Shown here: positions 21,443 to 62,474 of the stretch, in pieces | Numbering within the stretch: the first letter of the stretch is position 1 | Layout: every line of letters begins with the position of its first letter | DNA from: Macrostomum lignano | Taxonomy: Eukaryota | Length of the DNA stretch: 64,000 bases | NCBI GenBank assembly: GCA_002269645.1 | Contig: NIVC01003535.1 | Coordinates: 28,425-92,424, forward strand | Direction: 5' to 3' | Program-made: the position numbers and the translations under genes | Notes under the pieces: generated by a model | What the model was told of the DNA's origin: nothing | The model's database searches: none | What the model saw: the letters and a program-made list of their open reading frames with translations, nothing else

Positions 21443-22693
21443 TCATTGTCGATTTCTATGATGTGATAGTGTGCTACTTTTGTGGGCAGTAGGATTAGAT
21501 TGAATTACCAATTTTACTCTGATTTCAGAGCATGTGTAATCGCCACAAAGCCATCCGCCACTTACCTGACCTGCCGGTTCGTGACTCGACCGCAGGTCAA
21601 AAGACCTGTTCGCGGCTTGCCCGCGCACCCGTCCGTAATATCCGATGCCGGGACGAGAATGTCGAAGTTTTGGCAGCAGCTGAGCTGCCTCCATCATCAC
21701 CCGATTTGGTGCCAGCTTCTGCTGATCTTGCCGACCAGTCTTGCCACTTCGTTTCGACAACACGTAGCTGCGCAAAGGAGGCAGTTGCTTAGATTGTTGC
21801 CACGTTGGAGTTGAATCCGATTGTTCAAATTCATTGCACTTCTTCTCTTCCGAGTTGTCATCATCCTGAAAAGCTTCTCGGACCTCTACTTTCATTGTTG
21901 GTAGCTTTATGTCTTGCTCCTTTTTGTGCTCTAGCTGCTTTCTATTATCACTGTCTTCGTGGCGTTTCACAAACTCCGCTTCCCGGTGCTTCATATCGTC
22001 TTCTTCCTTGCGCTCCGCATTCTCTTCTTCATGGTGCTTTGAAGCCTCTTTTTCCAGATGCTCTGCATCCTCGTCTCCTTGGTGCTCCACGTCCTCGTCT
22101 CCCTGGAGCTCTGCATCCTCGTCTCCCTGGCGCTCTGCATCCTCGTCTCCCTGGCGCTCTGCATCCTCGTCTCCCTGATGCTCTGCATCTTCGTCTCCCT
22201 GATGCTCTGCATCCTCGTCTCCCTGATGCTCTGCATCCTCGTCTCCCTGATGCTCTGCATCCTCGTCTCCTTGGTGCTCCACGTCCTCGTCTCCCTGATG
22301 CTCTGCATCCTCGTCTCCCTGATGCTCTGCATCCTCGTCTCCCTGATGCTCTGCATCCTCGTCTCCTTGGTGCTCCACGTCCTCGTCTCCCTGGAGCTCT
22401 GCATCCTCGTCTCCCTGGCGCTCTGCATCCTCGTCTCCCTGATGCTCTGCATCTTCGTCTCCCTGATGCTCTGCATCCTCGTCTCCCTGATGCTCTGCAT
22501 CCTCGTCTCCCTGATGCTCTGCATCCTCGTCTCCTTGGTGCTCCACGTCCTCGTCTCCCTGATGCTCTGCATCCTCGTCTCCTTGGTGCTCCACGTCCTC
22601 GTCTCCCTGATGCTCTGATTTTTCTTCTCCTCGATGCATCGCTTTCGCTTCTTCGTCTTCACGATTCTGATTCTCAGCTTCTTGACTCGTCAT
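21443..22693 (-). CDS. 416-aa ORF with acidic 9-aa repeats (EDAEHQGDE) and a non-repetitive C-terminal half; unknown, possibly TE-derived or an exon
   Basis: Frame stays open about 190 codons beyond the 27-bp repeat; a candidate donor CAG|gtaagt lies near 21565; no recognisable domain. Confidence 0.35.
   Translation of the reverse strand: MTSQEAENQNREDEEAKAMHRGEEKSEHQGDEDVEHQGDEDAEHQGDEDVEHQGDEDAEHQGDEDAEHQGDEDAEHQGDEDAEHQGDEDAERQGDEDAELQGDEDVEHQGDEDAEHQGDEDAEHQGDEDAEHQGDEDVEHQGDEDAEHQGDEDAEHQGDEDAEHQGDEDAEHQGDEDAERQGDEDAERQGDEDAELQGDEDVEHQGDEDAEHLEKEASKHHEEENAERKEEDDMKHREAEFVKRHEDSDNRKQLEHKKEQDIKLPTMKVEVREAFQDDDNSEEKKCNEFEQSDSTPTWQQSKQLPPLRSYVLSKRSGKTGRQDQQKLAPNRVMMEAAQLLPKLRHSRPGIGYYGRVRGQAANRSFDLRSSHEPAGQVSGGWLCGDYTCSEIRVKLVIQSNPTAHKSSTLSHHRNRQ
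22055..22620. repeat. 27-bp tandem repeat (gctctgcatcctcgtctccctgat-type variants), ~21 copies
   Basis: Direct reading; encodes 9-aa repeats in several frames. Confidence 0.95.
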
Positions 22694-26184: not shown

Positions 26185-28569
26185 AACTTGCAGTGGTCAG
26201 TTTTTCACTTTGAGCTGCACAACGGTCAAATCGCCACGGACATTTCTTGTATTTCTCTTCCTTATGTACAGAAATGTATAAAGGACAAAACAAGTAATGA
26301 TCCCAAGATACGATTTCAATGAACGCCTACATGTACGAGTATTAAATAGTTGGCCACTATCTCCAGTTCTTTCTATGATTTCAATAAGCTTACACGTATG
26401 TTTGTAGAAGTACTTTCACTTTCCAGCATGTAAGATAGAAAGACTTTATATACTAAGGTAGAAAATAGATACTACAGCTACACGAAACTGTGAATAGATT
26501 CAACTATTCAGTTGAATTGCTTTTGACTCTTTCTGCCCTTCTAAGGGCCGGATGAAAGCATTATGCCGGCGCTTAAGATGACATCCCCATTCACCCCAGC
26601 AACTCAAAATGATTCGGAACTCAAAACATGGCAACATTGTGATTGGCTAATGATCGAGAGTTTAGTAATTTAACTTTTTTTCCAATATGCCAAAAATTAA
26701 GCGTTTCTTATCTACCATGTAGTATCGTATGTACGAGTAATTTGTAAGAAAGATCGGTAAATTACGCGGAGTTACTTAAAAAACTGGTAAAGCTTTACGT
26801 ACTACGGATATTACTCGTAATTTATTTTCACTGTCTGTATTTTTGCAAATAATAATGGGAGGTTAGCGAAATCTATTCTGTCAGAAATTTAAACAACACA
26901 CTATTGACTATATGTACATATAGTACTCGCTTTGCTGCAATGGCAATTAACGTCTTGGTTATTCTTATTTCTATTTCATTTGTCTATGAAACATACGGTA
27001 CATACAGTATGTATAATATGAACCACATGAACTACATGTAGATTACATTCAGATGGACAGATCATCTTCATCTAAACTGAGCGTGACGCGCTTGGGTTGA
27101 CGTCGACTATATGTAACGGAATAAGTGTGGGTGAGATTGCATGGCCTGGACGGGACATGGACAACCAGCAAAAACGGCTCACCTAGCGAAATGTTAATTG
27201 AGAGGGTAAGAAAATACACGTATCCATGTAAAAGAAAGAAGCAAGTGTGCCATTGTGCCTGCTAACCGCTTAGGGCGCCCCCAACAGGGTGTCTCTAAGG
27301 TGGCTCCCAGGGAAGTCGGGCCATTCCGAGGCCACGAGCTGGCCAATGGCCTGGCCGAGATTGCTCGACCAGTGATCGGGATCCTCATGGCTCCCTGCTC
27401 CCACCCATACCGCCGTTGTCACCCTGCACTTGGATTAACTGCCGTGGGTTACATCTAAGCATAGGGAAAGGGGCATGGGCTAACAGCCCACCTCCTGAGC
27501 TGCTGTTCCCTGTCACTCCCCCGCCCACCGCGGCTGATTGCATGGACTTAACAACTGCAGGGACATCTGCAGGGCGGTAACGGTAACCATGACCCTCTCA
27601 GTCATAGCTGCTTCACTGCTTTGCATTGTTACTTCCATGAAAAATCTGCAGTGATTCTGCATGCATAAAAAATCGTTGCATTTAATCATTTTCAGCAAAA
27701 TGCGTAGTTTTATTTGATCAAGACTTTATGGCCGGGCCCACTGAGTGGGCCCATCTTGTTGATATTTATCGTCTTTGATTTCGTTTTAGCCACTCTGTGG
27801 TGTGGGCCGACTTCATACTCGAAGAATTTGGTTATAGAGACAATCGGGATAAACTTCTACTCAAAATATTTATATTTGTAACATCGTTTTGACATCAGTC
27901 ATCGACAAGCACGATATTTAAAAAAGCGTGACTCAAATTGTCGCATTATATCAAAGTTTTTTTTATTGTTTTTGGTGTCAGTTTTGACTTAAAGTAAAAA
28001 CACAATTTTGTATAAGAGAAAAAATATGTTATAAATATTTATTTATTAATATCTACAGTTTACAAGCTTCTAAAGCCAGTCAATATTGCCAGTAAAATAA
28101 TAGAATATAATAATAGAATGATCAGACATCATTACCTGATGAACAATGAATATTAATAAATATATTTTTTCTGAGTAATCATTAAATGATATTTAAAATG
28201 TCTTAATTTTTAATCACGATATATTTATATAGGCCTACAGTAGACTAGTACTCGAAAATAGGCTTAGCCCTAGTTACTAATATAATTTTTTAAATAGCAA
28301 GAGATACAGACTGAATACTAATAAAAATACCCTTTACTTTCTGCATTCTTTGAGAAACATTAGTCCCCCTATTTTTTGCTGTCAAGTTGAACTTGAAGAA
28401 AGTTAGAGGTGTAGCAAGTCCTAGGCTACACTATACTAGCCTAGTAGTCTGATAATTCTTACTTAGTCTCAAATCATAAAATTGTGCTTTGATTGTCAAA
28501 ATTGTCATTTGACATGTTACTAGCATCAAACTATTACTGTTTAGCCCTACAAAGCATTTACTATCAATA

Positions 28570-31500
28570 ATGCTAGACTCTCTGCAATTTGCATTAAACC
28601 AAATAGAAAATTTGGTTGGTTCCCTTAACAAAAAGACTTTAAAGCAGTCAATTTCTGAAATTACTCAGGTAAGTTCTACTAAAATTAATAAGAGTAATAA
28701 TATGTCCTAAATTATCTAATGTCTTCATTAAGTTATATTTTATAAATATTTTAGGTTAAGGTAAAGAAAGTTTTATATTGAGTAAAGTTTATGCATGATG
28801 CATTAATAGAAAGTCAATATGAAATGATTTGTTAAAAAACATTTTTGCCAAGTTTATTTACCAAAAACCTTGCCAAAACATGATTTGTGTTTATATACAT
28901 GGTAGCCATCTACCTAATGTTTTAATTGCCTACATGGCAGTCTGCATCTTGTAAATAATATATTATATACTATTCTAATCATTGAAAATTAATATTCAAA
29001 TTAACAAAAAATAGCAATAAATTAAAATTATATAGGCCCTAATATTTAGCTAAAGGATAAAACAGGTAACAGCTTATTAATTAAATTAATAGCAATATGC
29101 AAATATGAAGGAAAGGGTCTAATTTGCTATAGGCCTATTGCCCTTTTGTCCCACTTTTGAATCTTAAATAAATACTAGAAAATTCTATCATATAATGGAC
29201 TTGAAAAATGGTTGGCATAAAGTATCTAGCGTATAAAACAATCCATTATAAAATTATGCCATAGAGCTAGTATATGGTATAGCTATTATTGGCATACAAT
29301 AGACCAAAAAATGTTATAATACAAAAAGGGTCTTATATTGTTGCAATACAAAAAGGTCTTTATTTGTCACAAAGCAAAGAAGGTTATTGTTGTTGCAATG
29401 CTTTTTTGATAATGTCCAGTATATAGATCACAAGTAAATTTGTTTTTTTTTTCTGTTATAAATTTAAATTTATAGTGTAGGGCAATGGTTCTCACAAGTG
29501 GAGTAAACTGCTGCTATGCCTATAAGCTCTCTGTTTATATGAATGTTTATAATAGAATATATGTAAATTTAGCAATAAACAAATTTAGTGATAGAAATGT
29601 AATATAGACAAATTTGGAAAAAAAGCAAATTTGGTAATAATCTAAACAAATTTAGCAATAAGTCTTTTATAAAACTAAAGTTAACATAGCTAAAGTTAAA
29701 ACAAATTATATATAAAGCTTTTTTAAATACTTGTGAAAAGTCTATTTTCTCGAAAATTTTGCTTTGCATTTCTGTCCAATTTCTTAAAGCCATTGTTTTA
29801 TTTAGATAGACTCAATGACAAGTCAAATGCCTATTATCTTATTTGATTATTAGTTTAACAGTCCTTTGCTATGTATAATCAATGTATATCATACCCAAGT
29901 GACTAATCAATTGACCTATTCAGTGATTTTATTTTACTAAACTAAAGCCCTTATGACCTTTGGTAGAAAAATACATTCAATCAAAATAAATTAGGTAGTC
30001 CCATATCTTTTTTTATTTTTTATTAGAGGCAGGGGGGTTGTGTGCACCCTGGTGCACTTTAAGCAACATAGGCACACAACCGGCGAGAGGCATTACTGCC
30101 CATTCCGCTGACTCCCTTAAGCAGGCATACAAGTGCGCAGATGCGTACGCAGGCACACAATCACACAGGAGTGTACAGCAGCCCTAACTTTATATTATCA
30201 TTAGGCATGTACACTTCATTGCGCCTTGGGGGGTTGGCTCTCAAGGTCATTAATTGCACAAGCAGAGCCAAGCCGAGATTCCAATCCAGCCCCAAATTAA
30301 TGTGACTGCACTTGGAATCAAGCCTGGGTTGCTGGCACACCAGAACAGCTGTGCTACTGCTGGGTTATGGCCCCCCTGTCCCACATCTTGAAAAATGAAT
30401 TAAAATTTCTTCAAAAGCATAAATGAAAAGCATTGTTTAGATAAAACAAACTCAATTTAAAGGGAAAGCTAGATTTGACTAATACTATTGTATCAAAATA
30501 ATTAGTAGCATTATGAGTGATACACATTTTTTTCTTTATTGTTGCCAAGTTTGACTAGGGGCCTAGATTGTTGCCAAGTTTGACTAGGGGCCTAGATTGT
30601 TGCCAAGTTTGACTAGGGGCCTAGATTGTTGCCAAGTTTGACTAGGGGCCTAGATTGTTGCCAAGTTTGACTAGGGGCCTAGATTGTTGCCAAATTTGTC
30701 CATAGTGAAACTCTTGCCAATGAAATGTATTTATTGCTAAATTGGTGAGCACCTATATAATATAGGACATGGATAGGGAAACAAGATCTTCATTTTAATG
30801 TTTTATATATTTTAACAATTTACATTTTAACATTTCAATGTTATTTGTTTTTTAGTTCATTTTTTTATTTATTCTCTTTGTCTATTATTGACTTTTGGCA
30901 TATTAACTGCTACCAATATGATGCATGACATATGGGCAATACCTTATTAGGTAATCTTTCTTTACCTAATTATAAATTCTATAATTCTTTTTTCATTTCC
31001 TATTTCAAAATCCTATCTCAAGTCATTAGATATTAGCCTTGGTAAATATAATTGAACATGAGCCAAAGAAATTTATTATAATAATAGTTGTATCCTGGTT
31101 GGCTATATTTCTTTTTCTACTAACTCAGTAGCATGCTTGGGTGCAACTTTGGGATTCACTTAGCCATTTCTATTGGCAACACACACACACACACACACAC
31201 ACGTAAGTTGCTATTGGATAGAATAGTAGTCACATGCTAATAGAAACTCTGGGTGATTCTCAAGGTTGTGCATGTATATTCAGTAGTATCATACATGTGC
31301 AATACCCATGTAGGGGCCTAGCCAAGGTAAGTTGCAAAAATGTTTACCCAAAAATAGACTTAATAGACTAAAAATTGAATTAATAAATTTACTAAACAAA
31401 AACTTTATGAATGAATGGACCCATTGTGATAGAACCAAGGGTAAGTTTTAATCATAGAATTAAACTATATTTTTATTAATTGTATTGAAAAATGAAAAAT

Positions 31501-57120: not shown

Positions 57121-58055
57121 TGGTTTCGACGATTCCGCGCTAGCGACGAATCCATCGAAGATCAGCCACGATCGGGTAGGCCTTCCGAAGTTGATGACGA
57201 AGAAATCGGCGCCATAGTGGAAGCTGACCCGCATCTGACAATACGTGAAATAGCGGCCACCCTTGGGGCGTCTCATAGCTCGTACAACCGAATTCAACAA
57301 ACTGCGTGCCATTGACAAGGTTTCAAAACTCGACAAGTGGGTGCCCCACCACCTCAGCAACTTTGACCGTCAGCGGCGGGCGGAGGCGGCAACTTCATTG
57401 CTCTCGTTCCGGCGTACCACAGCTTGGCTGGAGTCGATTAAGACTTGAGATGAGAAATGGGTGCTCTGCGTCAACGAGAAGCGCCGACAATCTTGGGTCT
57501 CTGAGAATCAACCACCGCAGCATCATCCGAAACCGGAGTTGCACCGCGAAAGGTCATGCTGTCTGTATGGTGGGACAGCAAAGGTATCCTGTGCTTCCTC
57601 GCAACACCACTGTCACAGCCGAGGTCTACTGCCAACAACTGCAGAAGGTGGCTGAGAAAATCGACGAACTGCGCCCAGGGCACAGCAAAGTTCTTTTCCT
57701 TCACGACAACGCCCGACCGCATACGGCTAAGGTGACCCGCCAGATATTGCTGCAACTGGGGTGGGAGATTCTCCCAAACCCACCATATTCTCCCGACCTT
57801 GCACCATCCGATTACCACCTGTTTTCGGCCATGAGCAACAGCCTGCGCGGTCAGAGCTTCGTTGATGACGATGAAGTCAATCAATGGCTCATACAGTGAT
57901 GGTTTCTACAGTGATGTTATAAAAAGTCTGCCAGAAAAATGGCAGAAGGTCATTGACTCAGATGGGGACTATTTTGATATTTGATGCGATTCAGCATTTA
58001 AAAAACTCGAGTTGATGGAACATTCTAGAATTGCCAGGAACTTTCTTGACAACCT
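57121..58055 (+). pseudogene. Decayed, 5'-truncated mariner (DD34D) transposase with right TIR
   Basis: WFRRF...EDQPRSGRPSEVD, WVPHHL, T*DEKW (in-frame TGA at 57446-57448), KVMLSVWWD, HDNARPH, YSPDLAPSDYHLF; 34 residues between the 2nd and 3rd Asp; frameshifts near 57290 and 57590; TIR-like attgccaggaactttcttgacaacct at 58030-58055. Confidence 0.92.
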
Positions 58056-58974
58056 TGGCGTTCTTGGCGTCCTGAAGAAATGTTATTGATTACCACAACG
58101 GGTCACAAGGTGGGGTGGGGGGGGACAAAGCATTGGCATGTCCCCCATAGCTTTTACTGAGGGGGACATGTCCCCCCCCTGGTGGCGACGCACCTGATGG
58201 CCAGCTTTCAAGGCACAGAGAGAGTACATGCCAGACGATTAGAAAGTCTGGGCTGCTGTACACCCTGTGTGAGCGTGTGCATGAGCTCGTGCCTGAGTAC
58301 AGAATTGGCGCTCTTGAATGTGCTCAGAGTCAGCGGAATGAGCACAGCCCTCGTACGAAAATTTAAAGTTTTTCTCACCGGAGAAAAATCCAGTGCCCAG
58401 CGATCTAATTGTTATCAACGCGGAGAATCTGCTTTCTTAAAAACTGTTCCTATTGAATTCGCCTAGCATTGCGGATTTTGTATCTGATGCTTGCGGCTTT
58501 TGCCCAACTTACAGAACCGTAATTTGCATGAGCCTGCAGCAGTTGTTAAGCTTCACAATGCCTGGATTCCTAGGTCCTGTAATGACACAGTGAACCCTTG
58601 CTTTATTGTTCGAGAAGAAGTCTAGTGAATCTCTCCATTCCCTCACTCCCTTTTTTCCTATTAGTTCCCTCTGAGGATTATGCTCCCATCAATCTTCTGA
58701 CAAGTTCTGAAATAACTGACAAAGTTTTAAAGCACGGCTTTGAATTGCAGGAGTCCGAAGAGTTTTATTTCAGCTTGCCTGGCCGGTACAGATCTTGCTC
58801 TGTGACTTGACATTTTTATGGAGCTTTCGTAGCTTTGGGGAAAAGTTTTTTAGGGATAAATTAAATATAACCGTTGCCTTTGAATTTGATAGCGTTGTCG
58901 CTGTAGACTGAACTCGCTGCTGTGGCGTCTACTGATTGGCCTTCTCTGCTGCTGAGTCAATTAGCTGTCCTTGC

Positions 58975-61928
58975 TCATTCTTTGTCTTCTTCTGATCTGC
59001 CCGAACCTCCTAGCTTCTTCATGATCAGCGGGTCGAACTTCTTTCTCATGATCAGCGGGTCGAAGCGCTTCATGATCAGCGGGTCGAAGCGCTTCATGAT
59101 CAGCGGGTCGAAGCGCTTCATGATCAGCGGGTCGAAGCGCTTCATGATCAGCGGGTCGAAGCGCTTCATGATCAGCGGGTCAAACCTCTTTCTCATGATC
59201 AGCGGGTCGAACTTCTTTCTCATGATCAGCGGGTCGAACTTCTTTCTCATGATCAGCGGGTCGAAGCGCTTTATGATCAGCGGGTCGAAGCGCTTCATGA
59301 TCAGCGGTCAAAGCGCTTCATGATCAGCGGGTCGAAGCGCTTCATGATCAGCGGGTCAAACCTCTTTCTCATGATCAGCGGGTCGAACCTCTTTCTCATG
59401 ATCAGCGGGTCGAACCTCTTTCTCATGATCAGCGGGTCGAAGCGGCGCTCGACTTCAGCTTGAGAGTCGGCATCCTCGATTTGCTGCGGAATGAGAGAGG
59501 CGAATCAAATTTCTCTCTGTAGCGCCACGAAAAATTGAGTTAGTAAAGTAAAGTTGCTATAGAAGGACTGCCGAACTGGAATTAAGATTATGTTCTTAGC
59601 CAAGCCACCGGCTCAAGACAGATCAGGATAGTGCTGAGTGCGCGATTTTCGCTTTCTATAACACTCTTGGAGTTAATCAATTTTGTTTCGGAACGGCAGA
59701 AGCAATAACTCTTATTCGGGATTCTGGATTTTACTAACTGCACTGACTGAGCGGCTGACTTGATGGAAGCAGCTCCCGATGACACACCGTGCGAAAAATT
59801 TTTAGAGTCTTAATTTTCTTATTTTTTAGTCTGCCTTCTTCATGCTTTTAGTTCATTTAGCTGGGTAAGCTGATTGATCAGACTGAATTTTAACTGGTTA
59901 GCACTGCTGATATTCAGTTCTGTTAGCTAAGTTCAACTGTTTAGAAGCTGGCCATCAACACTTTGCACACCGCTGGGATCTGCTTAATGACTTTCATGCC
60001 ACTGATTTGATTAATTTGCTTTTTGACACCTTCGCCCCACCGGCCCCCTCTGACTCCCTCTCTGACCTCCCCTCTCTGACCTCCCCTCTCTAGCGGATTC
60101 CTGTCTGACCTCCCCTCTCTAGCGGATTCCTCTCTGACCTCCCCTCTCTAGCGGATTCCTGTCTGACCTCCCCTCTCTAGCGGATTCCTCTCTGACCTCC
60201 CCTCTCTAGCGGATTCCTCTCTGACCTCCCTCTCTAGCGGATTCCTGTCTGACCTCCCCTCTCTAGCGGATTCCTGTCTGACCTCCCCTCTCTGGCCTCC
60301 CCTCTCTAGCGGATTCCTGTCTGACCTCCCCTCTCTGGCCTCTCCTCTCTGACCTCCCCTTTCTGACCTCTCCTCTCTGACCTCCCTTCTCTAGCGGATT
60401 CCTATCTGACCTCCCCTCTCTGGCCTCCCCTCTCCAGCTGTCCCGTTCTCCAACTCCGTTTCAAAACTATCCACCGACCTCTCTTTGACCCCTGTAAATG
60501 TGCTGAACTTCAAGTTCAACATCGATACTCTCCATGTCTTTCCGAGCTCTGTGAACTGAGCTGTACAGAACGGTCACAATGTCTATTATCCACAATTGCC
60601 GGTTAAAAGCATTCTATTTTTGCTCATATTGTGTTGCTCTGATTGCCCGGCTTTTGCTAGATACGGGAGTTTCTTCCGAATTCTCTGCAGAAACGATTTT
60701 GTTTGTTCAGAATAGCGTCGTCTGGCAGGCAAAAAGTCGATCAGCCTAGATAAACCCGCGCCAAGGACGTCGATAAAGACCTGGACTAGAGTAAAACTTG
60801 TCCATAAATTGGATTGTTTTTTGGGGTTAAAGTCGAGAGAAGTCTGGCTTCTAGTCCAAGTGTTATGTAAAGAAGTCCTTGATACAAGCTGCATTGTTAA
60901 TCTCCTGTCTGCCGTGTGTTTCCAGGGCAAACAACTGCTGAGTTTAAAGCCCCAATTACGAGTAATGACACCCCGTTTTCTTCTTCTCTACAGGTGGATT
61001 AGAGTTATACTAATCCTCCTCCTACTGCAAACCTGCGGAAGCGATCGCCGTCTATGGCAGTCAATCGGGCCATCTCACCCTTCCCTCTCCCCTGTGTCAT
61101 CTCACCCCTTCTCTCTCCCCTGTGCCATCTCACCCTTCCCTCTCCCCTGTGCCATCTCACCCTTAATAACTCTCCCCTGTGCCATCTCACCCTTCACTCT
61201 CCCTGTGCCATCTCACCCCTCCTCTCTCCCTGTGCCATCTCACCCCTTCCTCTCCCCTGTGCCATCTCACCCCTCCTCTCTCCCCTGTGCCATCTCACCC
61301 CTTCCCTCTCCCCTGTGCCATCTCACCCTTCACTCTCCCCTGTGCCATCTCACCCCTTCCCTCTCCCCTGTGCCATCTCACCCCTTCTCTCTCCCTATGC
61401 CATCTCACCCCTGTCACTCCTGCCCTCCCTGTCACTCCTGCCCTCCCTCTCGCTCTCGCCCTCCCTCTCACTCCCGCCCTCCCTCTCACTCTCGCCCTCC
61501 CTCTCACTCCCGCCCTCCCTCTCACTCTCACCCTCCTCTCGCCCTCGCCCTCCCTCTCACTCCCGCCCTCCCTCTCACTCTCACCCTCCCTCTCGCCCTC
61601 CCTCTCACTCCCGCCCTCCCTCTCACTCCCGCCCTCCGTCTCGCTCTCGCCCTCCTCTCACTCCCGCCCTCCCTCTCGCTCTCACCCTCCCTCTCACTCT
61701 CGCCCTCCTCTCACTCTCGCCCTCCCTCTCACTCTCGCCCTCTCTCTCGCTCTCGCCCTCCCTCTCACTCCCGCCCTCCCTCTCGCTCCCGCCCTCCCTC
61801 TCGCTCTCGCCCTCCTTCTCGCTCTCGCCCTCCCTCTCGTCTCGCCATTCTCACCTTGAGGCTGGCAGGTGCACCAGACAGAGGGCGAGCACAGCCCACC
61901 AGATGGGCAGCTTGGTGCAGTGCTTCAT
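58975..61928 (-). CDS. Neuropeptide precursor with 17 FDPLI(M/I) peptides; 1-nt frameshift at ~59306
   Basis: Exon 61928-61855 encodes signal peptide MKHCTKLPIWWAVLALCLVHLPAS with donor AG|gtgaga. Last exon 59483-58975 follows a strong acceptor ctctctcattccgcag and reads QIEDADSQAEVERR-FDPLIM-RKR-FDPLIM-...-KK-LGGSGRSEEDKE*. The phases need a linking exon; candidate 61032-61011 (RFAVGGGL; acceptor cgcttccgcag, weak donor gtataa) is less certain. Confidence 0.8.
60050..60435. repeat. 29-bp minisatellite (neuropeptide gene intron)
   Basis: Unit ctgacctcccctctctagcggattcctgt. Confidence 0.92.
61070..61845. repeat. Two adjacent CT-rich arrays (~27-bp ccatctcacccct...cccctgtg, then ~18-bp ctctcactcccgccctcc) in neuropeptide gene intron 1
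   Basis: Direct reading; the unit changes near 61410. Confidence 0.9.
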
Positions 61929-62474
61929 GTCTCCTCAAAGCGGCAAGCAGGTTCTCCACAATGGGCTGCTCAGCTATGCAGTGGCGCGGCGCGTGTCTGC
62001 AAGATGGGAACAAAAGCGAGCGAGTAGTTGCGTCCTAGTTTTTTTTTCCTCGCCAATTAGGGTCCTAAAATTTTCCTCCCCATAAGTGTATTTAACTTCC
62101 CAATTCCCCTTCCCAATTAGTTCTATTCAAACTGTCGCTCCAGTAGTGCTTGAGTTGCACCCGAGTCTCGTAAGCCCGCTCTCATTGTCTGACACGCTTC
62201 TACTCAATTTGATGAGGCAGCTCATGAATTATTCAGCAATTCCTCGCTAAATGCTGCAGCACTTTCTTTGTCTCATCATTGCAGTTTCTTTTCATGGTGC
62301 ATTGTTCTGCCCAGAGCTGTCAACTGCGCCACAGCCTAGCCTTAGCCGTAGCCCTTTAAATAATGATAGCTCATAGAAATCTTCCCGTTGCCCTCAACTT
62401 TTGTTTTCCACTAATTTTCAAGCTCAATTCACGTCTATCACAAAAATATTTTGTTAATTTTCAACTTGCTTTTC

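What the first reader, a model, noticed from the sequence alone, without database searches (positions are those of the whole stretch)
58975..61928. Hidden neuropeptide precursor: 17 copies of the hexapeptide FDPLIM disguised as a minisatellite
Seen: the 24/27-bp repeat at 59020-59445 reads on the minus strand as FDPLI(M/I) x17, each copy flanked by KR, RR, RKR, RKK or KK. The exon starts at a strong acceptor, has an acidic pro-region (QIEDADSQAEVE) and an acidic tail, and a signal-peptide exon with a canonical donor lies 2.4 kb upstream. Variation between units is almost confined to the basic linker and synonymous sites (TTC/TTT), as expected under selection on the peptide. Established: signal peptide + acidic spacer + repeated peptides between dibasic sites is the prohormone-convertase precursor architecture; with no Gly before the basic residues the peptides should be non-amidated. 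Inference: the FDPL core recalls pedal-peptide/orcokinin-type and some flatworm DP-containing peptides, but I cannot assign a family; it may be undescribed. Automatic pipelines would probably mask or miss it.
Basis: partly seen in the sequence, partly recalled or inferred. Interest (0 to 1): 0.85.

Follow-up and report, generated by a model that had tools for sequence, protein, structure and literature searches.

The report
Flatworm FDPLIM neuropeptide precursor gene
The "minisatellite" is the peptide-coding exon of a Macrostomum lignano neuropeptide precursor from a flatworm family already known in planarians (spp-15) and schistosomes (npp-26), but this copy has a one-base frameshift and the proposed splice is out of frame as written.

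Summary
The repeat is real. It has 17 units of 24 or 27 bp at 59441-59020 on the minus strand, reading FDPLI(M/I) between purely basic linkers. An acidic pro-region precedes the array and a short tail follows it. Two problems were missed. Unit 6 lacks one base, so the frame breaks after five copies. The proposed junction 61855 to 59483 is out of frame, because the exon is 74 nt (phase 2 joined to phase 0).

The window is Macrostomum lignano. Two paralogues exist: FDPLMM x16 beside a second CNOT1 copy, with an uninterrupted two-exon gene, and FDPLYGM. In the FDPLMM array every within-peptide nucleotide variant is synonymous. Only the peptide exon aligns between the two loci (82%).

The family is not undescribed. 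Planarian spp-15 yields FDPIQF-amide and FDPIMF-amide, confirmed by mass spectrometry. Schistosome npp-26 yields non-amidated NFDPILF and SYFDPIIY, also confirmed, and marks one neuron cluster. Both have the same architecture and F-D-P-[IL] core.

Verdict: a real gene, wrongly modelled in public protein sets, and a new member of a known flatworm peptide family. Its 5' end is unresolved, and this copy is either mis-assembled or recently damaged. No expression evidence for this locus could be obtained. Interest is moderate to low.

The parts
61855..61928 (-). Upstream exon, 74 nt from the ATG at 61928. In the ATG frame it reads MKHCTKLPIWWAVLALCLVHLPAS plus 2 nt, which looks like a signal peptide. 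The +1 frame (…AEQPIVENLLAALRRHEALHQAAHLVGCARPLSGAPASLK) is also open and ends in phase 0.
   Evidence: It is the only signal-like ATG ORF within 4.5 kb upstream on this strand.
61849..61854 (-). Strong donor AAG|GTGAGA. It is phase 2 in the ATG frame and phase 0 in the +1 frame.
61894..61899 (-). Alternative donor CTG|GTGGGC, used by the UniProt model A0A1I8HH48 (…HQAAHL|QIEDAD).
61869..61874 (-). Weak donor CTG|GTGCAC. Of the two donors that are phase 0 in the ATG frame as assembled, it is the only one that keeps most of the hydrophobic core; the other, GCT|GTGCTC at 61893, cuts the core after 12 residues. It would give MKHCTKLPIWWAVLALCL|QIEDAD.
59484..61854 (-). Intron of 2371 nt, largely filled by three minisatellite blocks (61846-61409, 61412-61069, 60434-60044).
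59484..59510 (-). Acceptor: pyrimidine-rich tract plus CAG. It is the only AG that opens the FDPLIM frame, and it is phase 0.
59442..59483 (-). Acidic pro-region QIEDADSQAEVE followed by RR.
   Evidence: It aligns with the start of exon 2 of the paralogue.
59020..59441 (-). 17 units encoding FDPLIM (15 units), FDPLII (1 unit) and one frameshifted unit. Linkers are RKR, KR, RKK or KK.
59290..59312 (-). Unit 6, 23 nt. One C is missing from GACCCG (around 59305-59307), causing a frameshift and a stop. The unit is intact in A0A1I8HH48.
58975..59019 (-). KK, then the C-terminal tail LGGSGRSEEDKE, then TGA.
58764..58769 (-). First AATAAA downstream of the stop, about 205 nt away. It is a candidate poly(A) signal; a second lies at 58607-58602.
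   Evidence: Consensus match only.

Best explanation
This is a Macrostomum lignano gene for a secreted multi-copy peptide precursor of the flatworm F-D-P-[IL]-x-x family (planarian spp-15, schistosome npp-26).

Inferred mechanism, from established prohormone processing and from the mass-spectrometry results for the homologues:
- The precursor enters the secretory pathway.
- Prohormone convertases cut after the KR, RKR, RKK and KK linkers.
- A carboxypeptidase removes the basic residues.
- Up to 17 copies of the free-acid hexapeptide FDPLIM are released (MH+ 735.37), plus one FDPLII. They are not amidated because no Gly precedes the linkers.
- By analogy with spp-15 and npp-26, the gene would be expressed in a subset of neurons.

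As assembled, the window copy is not an intact ORF. Unit 6 has a one-base deletion. The 5' exon cannot be joined in frame from its ATG through the strong donor. Three routes to an in-frame start remain open:
1. One base is missing in the 5' exon. For example TGT[G]CTGG gives …ALCAGAPASLK|QIEDAD, which has an A-x-A site and the LCAG motif of the paralogue.
2. The weak phase-0 donor at 61875 is used.
3. The start lies in a further upstream exon, as in the UniProt model.

The deletions are either assembly errors or very recent lesions in one copy of a neopolyploid genome.
For: Shown here:
- The species and an intact version of unit 6 come from A0A1I8HH48. It has the same order of units, including FDPLII at unit 7.
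- The paralogue PAA57848.1 lies on NIVC01002440.1 beside a CNOT1 copy. Its structure is an 81-nt signal exon (phase 0), a 320-nt intron, then an acidic spacer and 16 uninterrupted FDPLMM units. Its within-peptide variants are GAT x2 and CCA x2, all synonymous. Its linker variants are K or R only.
- The window also carries CNOT1.
- Only the peptide exon aligns between the two loci, at 82%. Introns, UTRs and exon 1 do not align.
- The linkers AAGCGC and AGAAAGAGG differ by a 3-nt indel and a two-step Arg-to-Arg change, yet stay basic.
- A third paralogue, A0A1I8FZM5, has a signal peptide followed by repeated KR-FDPLYGM.
- A phmmer scan of 1.84 billion proteins recovers schistosome npp-26 orthologues (E 9.6e-9 and 3e-5) and other precursors with a signal peptide and KR-xFDPIxY units.
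- BLASTP gives 6e-24 against Smed-spp-15 and 2e-9 against Sma-npp-26. The true residue order ranks 9th and 11th of 720 permutations.

From the literature:
- spp-15 is a signal peptide plus (KR-FDPIQFG) x8. The peptides were confirmed by mass spectrometry, and the gene is expressed in cephalic ganglia and nerve cords (PMC2953531).
- Sm-npp-26 peptides are non-amidated by LC-MS/MS (PMC9495596).
- NPP-26 marks the neuron-3 cluster of the miracidium (PMC11349301).
Against: - The ORF in the window is interrupted, and the ATG frame is out of phase with the peptide exon at the strong donor.
- No transcript, junction or peptide evidence could be obtained for this locus.
- No NCBI protein for an FDPLIM gene turned up.
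- Signal-like ORFs and open frames in minisatellites are common in this window.
- E-values for repeat proteins are inflated. Many unrelated repeat proteins scored better than the npp-26 orthologues.
- The peptide ends in Met, whereas known family members end in Phe or Tyr.
- About 3.5 kb of long CNOT1 exons show no frameshift, so a general assembly error rate does not easily explain two deletions in about 600 nt.
Confidence: 0.8

Rival explanations
1. The window copy is a dead or dying duplicate. A real precursor gene was disabled by true one-base deletions in one of the three recent subgenome copies, and an intact copy (A0A1I8HH48-like) does the work.
For: - There are two frame problems within about 600 nt, while about 3.5 kb of neighbouring CNOT1 exons are clean.
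- The genome has three paralogous subgenomes with roughly 2% divergence (PMC10733133).
- No annotated NCBI protein was found for this locus.
Against: - The 107 residues comparable with A0A1I8HH48 (25 of the upstream exon read in the +1 frame, 82 of the peptide exon) are otherwise identical, which looks like the same locus.
- Two indels with no substitutions is more typical of long-read error in or near tandem repeats than of decay.
- The array shows no other damage.
Confidence: 0.25
2. The array is a non-coding minisatellite whose peptide-like reading is a coincidence.
For: - 40% of the window is tandem repeat and many arrays have open frames. Another array even has one dibasic pair per unit.
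- The antisense frame of this array is also open and reads KR-FMISGS.
- The sense frame is broken.
Against: - The paralogous array keeps the frame over 16 units, with only synonymous or K/R changes.
- The array is the only alignable part of the two loci.
- The antisense KR reading is lost in the 27-nt units and in the paralogue.
- The motif, linkers and architecture match peptide precursors confirmed by mass spectrometry in two other flatworm orders.
Confidence: 0.03
3. It is a genuine secreted peptide precursor, but its product is not a neuronal signal. It could be a gland, adhesive, antimicrobial or reproductive secretion.
For: - No expression data exist for the M. lignano genes.
- spp-15 also labels unidentified sub-epidermal cells and the pharynx.
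- The synthetic npp-26 peptide was too hydrophobic to assay, so no bioactivity is known.
Against: Both characterised homologues are predominantly neural: cephalic ganglia and nerve cords for spp-15, and a neuron cluster co-expressing complexin and 7B2 for NPP-26.
Confidence: 0.1

Closest known systems
Schmidtea mediterranea secreted peptide prohormone 15 (Smed-spp-15, GenBank BK007013; Collins et al. 2010, PMC2953531)
   Same: - Signal peptide, then a short spacer, then head-to-tail short peptides between KR sites.
- Core F-D-P-[I/L]-x-x.
- The 9-residue unit FDPIQF-GKR lines up with FDPLIM-RKR.
   Different: - Planarian units carry Gly and are amidated (FDPIQF-amide). The M. lignano units have Arg at that position or lack it, so the peptide is a free acid.
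- The planarian peptide ends in Phe, the M. lignano peptide in Met.
- 9 copies against 17.
Schistosoma npp-26 (Smp_071050 and orthologues)
   Same: - Non-amidated peptides NFDPILF, SYFDPIIY and SYFDPILF between KR sites, confirmed by LC-MS/MS.
- Recovered by phmmer from the window ORF.
   Different: - Schistosome peptides have 1-2 extra N-terminal residues and end in Phe or Tyr.
- They have fewer and more varied copies.
- They have a long non-repetitive N-terminal pro-region.
M. lignano paralogues PAA57848.1 (FDPLMM x16 in the genome) and A0A1I8FZM5 (FDPLYGM)
   Same: - Same species and same architecture.
- The FDPLMM gene sits next to a CNOT1 paralogue, as the window gene does.
- The arrays are 82% identical.
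   Different: - The FDPLMM gene has an intact ORF, a 320-nt intron and only 24-nt units.
- It has the opposite orientation relative to CNOT1.
- Its tail is unrelated (RFLRKLHRLHE).
Pedal peptide / orcokinin precursors
   Same: Multi-copy, non-amidated peptides with F-D near the N-terminus.
   Different: - From my own knowledge, those peptides are roughly 13-15 residues long and have a conserved C-terminal part.
- Collins et al. list spp-15 under 'miscellaneous amidated peptides'.
- No sequence search here linked the two.
Caenorhabditis angaria CAI5456649.1
   Same: Signal peptide plus 11 short peptides starting FDP between KR or KK sites.
   Different: - It is a nematode protein, and the residues after FDP are variable (Y, L, M, T, F).
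- Whether it is a homologue or a convergent form was not tested.

Membership tests
Flatworm spp-15 / npp-26 FDP[IL]-peptide precursors | Several copies of a short peptide with the core F-D-P-[I/L]-x-x | tested here: met
   There are 16 readable FDPLI[MI] units. The residue order ranks 9th and 11th of 720 permutations against spp-15 and npp-26.
Flatworm spp-15 / npp-26 FDP[IL]-peptide precursors | Every copy bounded by dibasic cleavage sites | tested here: met
   RR, RKR, KR, RKK or KK flank all 17 units.
Flatworm spp-15 / npp-26 FDP[IL]-peptide precursors | N-terminal signal peptide in frame with the peptides | tested here: inconclusive
   A signal-like ORF exists at 61928 but is out of phase at the strong donor. 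The paralogue has an in-frame signal exon. No SignalP was available.
Flatworm spp-15 / npp-26 FDP[IL]-peptide precursors | Detectable sequence similarity to named members | tested here: met
   phmmer gives E 9.6e-9 to the S. turkestanicum orthologue and 3e-5 to the S. curassoni orthologue. BLASTP gives 6e-24 and 2e-9. E-values for repeat proteins are inflated.
Flatworm spp-15 / npp-26 FDP[IL]-peptide precursors | Aromatic C-terminal residue (Phe or Tyr) in the mature peptide | tested here: not met
   FDPLIM ends in Met, as do FDPLMM and FDPLYGM. I treat this as lineage variation, not as grounds for exclusion.
Flatworm spp-15 / npp-26 FDP[IL]-peptide precursors | Expression in neurons and processed peptides detectable by mass spectrometry | not testable with these tools
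   No transcript or peptidome data for M. lignano could be reached.
Functional (intact) protein-coding gene | Uninterrupted ORF from start codon to stop codon | tested here: not met
   There is a one-base deletion in unit 6 and a phase mismatch at 61855/59483.
Pedal peptide / orcokinin family | Peptides of about 13-15 residues with conserved N- and C-terminal parts (my own knowledge of the family) | tested here: not met
   The peptides are 6 residues long.
Non-coding minisatellite | Unit length and substitutions indifferent to reading frame, with no conservation between old paralogues | tested here: not met
   Length variants come in steps of 3 nt, apart from the one deletion. The paralogue's variants are synonymous or K/R. 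The array is the only conserved segment between the loci.

The most novel reading that the evidence does not exclude
The FDP-peptides form a family wider than parasitic and planarian flatworms. It would reach the early-branching Macrostomorpha, with three paralogues in M. lignano, and possibly nematodes (the C. angaria precursor). The M. lignano 9-residue unit FDPLIM-RKR would then be a de-amidated derivative of an ancestral FDPIxF-GKR unit through a Gly-to-Arg change. The family's receptor is unknown, so M. lignano, which can be made transgenic, would become a tractable system for finding it.
Probability: 0.15. Interest if true: 0.5.

Novelty: new member of a known kind. Interest (0 to 1): 0.35.

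Why it matters
- It corrects the annotation of a model flatworm. One public model of this gene reads the 5' exon in the wrong frame and carries a spurious domain name. The paralogue's model shows 5 of its 16 peptide copies.
- It places the spp-15/npp-26 peptide family in Macrostomorpha, so the family predates the split between planarians and parasitic flatworms.
- It gives exact masses for a peptidomics search.
- It is a caution for genome scans. In a genome where 40% of a window is minisatellite, repeat masking can hide multi-copy peptide genes. Equally, open frames, dibasic sites and signal-like ORFs appear by chance.
- It does not reveal a new kind of system.

Tried and rejected
- A literature search for FDPLIM, FDPLYGM and KRFDPL found nothing relevant.
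- Exact-protein look-ups for A0A1I8HH48, A0A1I8FZM5, the 107-aa window ORF and the 416-aa ORF at 21443-22693 found no contigs. No transcript or second genomic copy of this locus could be read.
- A word-indexed search with the FDPLYGM paralogue found only the two M. lignano proteins.
- The last protein search, with a CNOT1 exon, was meant to retrieve the window's own annotated contig and its called genes. It returned nothing at E <= 1e-50 and was wasted.
- McVeigh et al. 2009 is not held under the id I tried.
- I looked for another in-phase signal exon within 4.5 kb upstream and found none.
- I looked for the first 34 residues of A0A1I8HH48 in the window and in the paralogous locus. They are absent from both.
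- Global alignment of the two signal exons places a 1-nt gap after TCTGT. Protein alignment scores do not discriminate between the corrected and uncorrected readings (68 against 70), so the position of any missing base is a hypothesis only.
- The antisense reading (KR-FMISGS) was rejected. It fails in the 27-nt units and in the paralogue.
Full report
**What is in the sequence**

TRF reports a 24-bp array at 59017-59444 with 17.0 copies and a 176-bp higher-order period. On the minus strand I split it at each TTY-GAC. This gives 17 units starting at 59441, ten of 24 nt, six of 27 nt and one of 23 nt (the last counted with its KK linker). They read FDPLIM followed by KR, RKR, RKK or KK. RR precedes unit 1 and unit 7 is FDPLII.

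Two things were overlooked:
- Unit 6 is 23 nt, GACCCG having become GACCG. The minus-strand frame stops at FDR* after five copies, and the other eleven copies sit in a different frame.
- The 5' exon is 74 nt, so it ends in phase 2. The only AG that opens the FDPLIM frame is phase 0. The stated junction therefore yields a 42-residue product with no FDPLIM.

**Is it more than chance?**

- 40% of the window is tandem repeat (44 arrays). Many arrays have two to six open frames, and another 24-bp array at 22057-22617 also has one dibasic pair per unit in one open frame.
- The antisense strand of the FDPLIM array is itself open and reads KR-FMISGS.
- ATG ORFs that look like signal peptides occur at 0.1-0.2 per kb per strand, so one within 2.4 kb is unremarkable.

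**Related sequences settle the coding question**

The best database hit is Macrostomum lignano A0A1I8HH48. It has the same pro-region and the same order of units, including FDPLII at position 7, and its unit 6 is intact.

A second M. lignano protein, A0A1I8FZM5, has a clear signal peptide followed by repeated KR-FDPLYGM.

A full HMMER scan of 1.84 billion representatives found a third, PAA57848.1, encoding FDPLMM. Its genomic locus is NIVC01002440.1 in the Mlig_3_7 assembly, and it lies next to a CNOT1 gene. The window gene also lies next to CNOT1, which occupies 31.8-53.2 kb on the plus strand (the 3' end). In that locus the gene is uninterrupted:
- an 81-nt signal exon (MRHNSTCRIGLACLMAFLLCAGVTHCE) with donor GAG|GTGCGT in phase 0;
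- a 320-nt intron;
- an acidic spacer, then 16 units of FDPLMM.

Among those 16 units the only variants inside the peptide are GAC/GAT in two units and CCG/CCA in two units, all synonymous. The linker variants are Lys or Arg only.

Between the two loci only the peptide exon aligns, at 82% identity. Introns, UTRs and the signal exon do not align. A neighbouring CNOT1 exon is 85.5% identical. The array is therefore conserved about as well as an ordinary coding exon.

Within the window, the two linker types AAGCGC and AGAAAGAGG differ by a codon-sized indel and a two-step Arg-to-Arg change.

The Mlig_3_7 annotation was built from RNA-seq-based transcript assemblies (PMC5730564). The paralogue's exon junction is therefore probably transcript-supported, although its annotated protein collapses 16 copies to 5.

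**The family is already known**

- Collins et al. 2010 (PMC2953531) describe planarian Smed-spp-15. It has a signal peptide, a short spacer and (KR-FDPIQFG) x8 plus FDPIMFG. FDPIQF-amide and FDPIMF-amide were confirmed by tandem MS. The gene is expressed in the cephalic ganglia, ventral nerve cords, sub-epidermal cells and pharynx.
- The same paper equates spp-15 with Schistosoma npp-26 (Smp_071050), which encodes NFDPILF, SYFDPIIY and SYFDPILF between KR sites.
- Those schistosome peptides were later detected by LC-MS/MS as free acids (PMC9495596).
- NPP-26 is the unique marker of one neuron cluster in the miracidium (PMC11349301).

Sequence comparisons support the link:
- The HMMER scan with the window ORF recovered npp-26 orthologues from S. 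turkestanicum (E 9.6e-9) and S. curassoni (E 3e-5). It also recovered an unnamed environmental protein with ten KR-YFDPIMY units.
- BLASTP of the frame-corrected exon gives 6e-24 against spp-15 and 2e-9 against Sma-npp-26.
- Repeats inflate such values, so I permuted the six residues. The true order ranks 9th and 11th of 720, and the better-scoring orders are ones even closer to xDPIxF.
- The 9-residue units align as FDPIQF-GKR against FDPLIM-RKR. The amidation Gly of the planarian corresponds to an Arg in M. lignano.

I found no support for a pedal-peptide or orcokinin relationship.

**How it most likely works**

Shown: the architecture, the frame conservation and the family resemblance.

Inferred from established prohormone processing and from the MS-confirmed homologues:
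- entry into the secretory pathway;
- convertase cleavage after the basic linkers;
- carboxypeptidase trimming;
- release of many copies of non-amidated FDPLIM from neurons.

Neuronal expression in M. lignano is an analogy and has not been observed.

**The 5' end is unresolved**

Four readings remain.
1. One base is missing in the 5' exon.
   - Alignment with the paralogue puts a gap after TCTGT.
   - Restoring a G there gives MKHCTKLPIWWAVLALCAGAPASLK, 75 nt, phase 0 at the strong donor.
   - That reading has an A-P-A site and the LCAG motif of the paralogue.
   - Against it, about 3.5 kb of CNOT1 exons in the same window show no frameshift, so random assembly error is not frequent here.
2. 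The weak phase-0 donor CTG|GTGCAC at 61875 is used, giving an 18-residue leader.
3. The exon is internal and is read in its other open frame, which is in phase at 61855. The start then lies in an exon outside the window.
   - This is what A0A1I8HH48 implies, although that model uses the donor at 61900.
   - Its first 34 residues, which include a hydrophobic stretch, are found neither in the window nor in the paralogous locus.
   - The sister model A0A1I8FZM5 carries 52 residues of start-less sequence upstream of its obvious signal peptide. That suggests these models simply translate 5' UTR.
4. The copy is recently dead, and the frame lesions are real.

My rough weights are 35%, 20%, 25% and 20%.

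**Verdict**

The array is a coding exon for a multi-copy peptide precursor that annotation handles badly. The gene model is wrong in detail, the ORF in this window is broken, and the family is not new. I classify it as a new member of a known flatworm neuropeptide family. It extends that family to Macrostomorpha, with three paralogues and an unusually high copy number.

Noticed in passing
window 31837-53186 (+): A CNOT1 (CCR4-NOT subunit 1) gene. All Pfam CNOT1 domains appear in order across long exons, and its introns are packed with minisatellites. A second CNOT1 copy neighbours the FDPLMM paralogue on NIVC01002440.1, but the peptide gene there has the opposite relative orientation.
   Followed up: partly
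whole window: 44 non-overlapping tandem-repeat arrays cover 40% of the 64 kb. The published genome-wide figure for simple and tandem repeats is about 15%. Many arrays give long ORFs in several frames.
   Followed up: partly
window 57306-57899 (+): A remnant of a mariner/Tc1-type DDE transposase, with partial matches to Pfam Transposase_1 and DDE_3. It lies just downstream of the peptide gene's 3' end.
   Followed up: partly
window 21443-22693 (-): A 416-aa ATG ORF whose centre is a 24-bp repeat reading HQGDEDAE about 23 times, with non-repetitive ends. It has no Pfam match and no exact record in the collection. Five of the six frames of the array are open, so its coding status is unknown.
   Followed up: partly
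window 58922-59463 (+): The antisense strand of the FDPLIM array is open throughout and reads KR-FMISGS in the 24-nt units. This is a by-product of the near-palindromic AAGCGC linker and is not conserved in the paralogue.
   Followed up: yes
L001 10001-10872 (NIVC01002440.1): The NCBI protein PAA57848.1 has 5 FDPLMM copies, but the genome encodes 16 in one uninterrupted exon. The annotation must contain a spurious gap inside the repeat, probably from a collapsed transcript assembly.
   Followed up: yes
protein P0003 (Caenorhabditis angaria CAI5456649.1): A nematode precursor with a signal peptide and 11 short peptides starting FDP between KR or KK sites. Whether it is related to the flatworm family or convergent is unknown.
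   Followed up: no
window 61765-62013 (-): The frame +1 to the ATG at 61928 is open for 82 codons. It runs through the whole 5' exon and on into the intronic minisatellite, and it is in phase with the peptide exon at the strong donor.
   Followed up: partly
window 28001-30000: A sharp drop in G+C to 26.5%, against 43-54% elsewhere in the window. There are no N runs. The cause was not examined.
   Followed up: no
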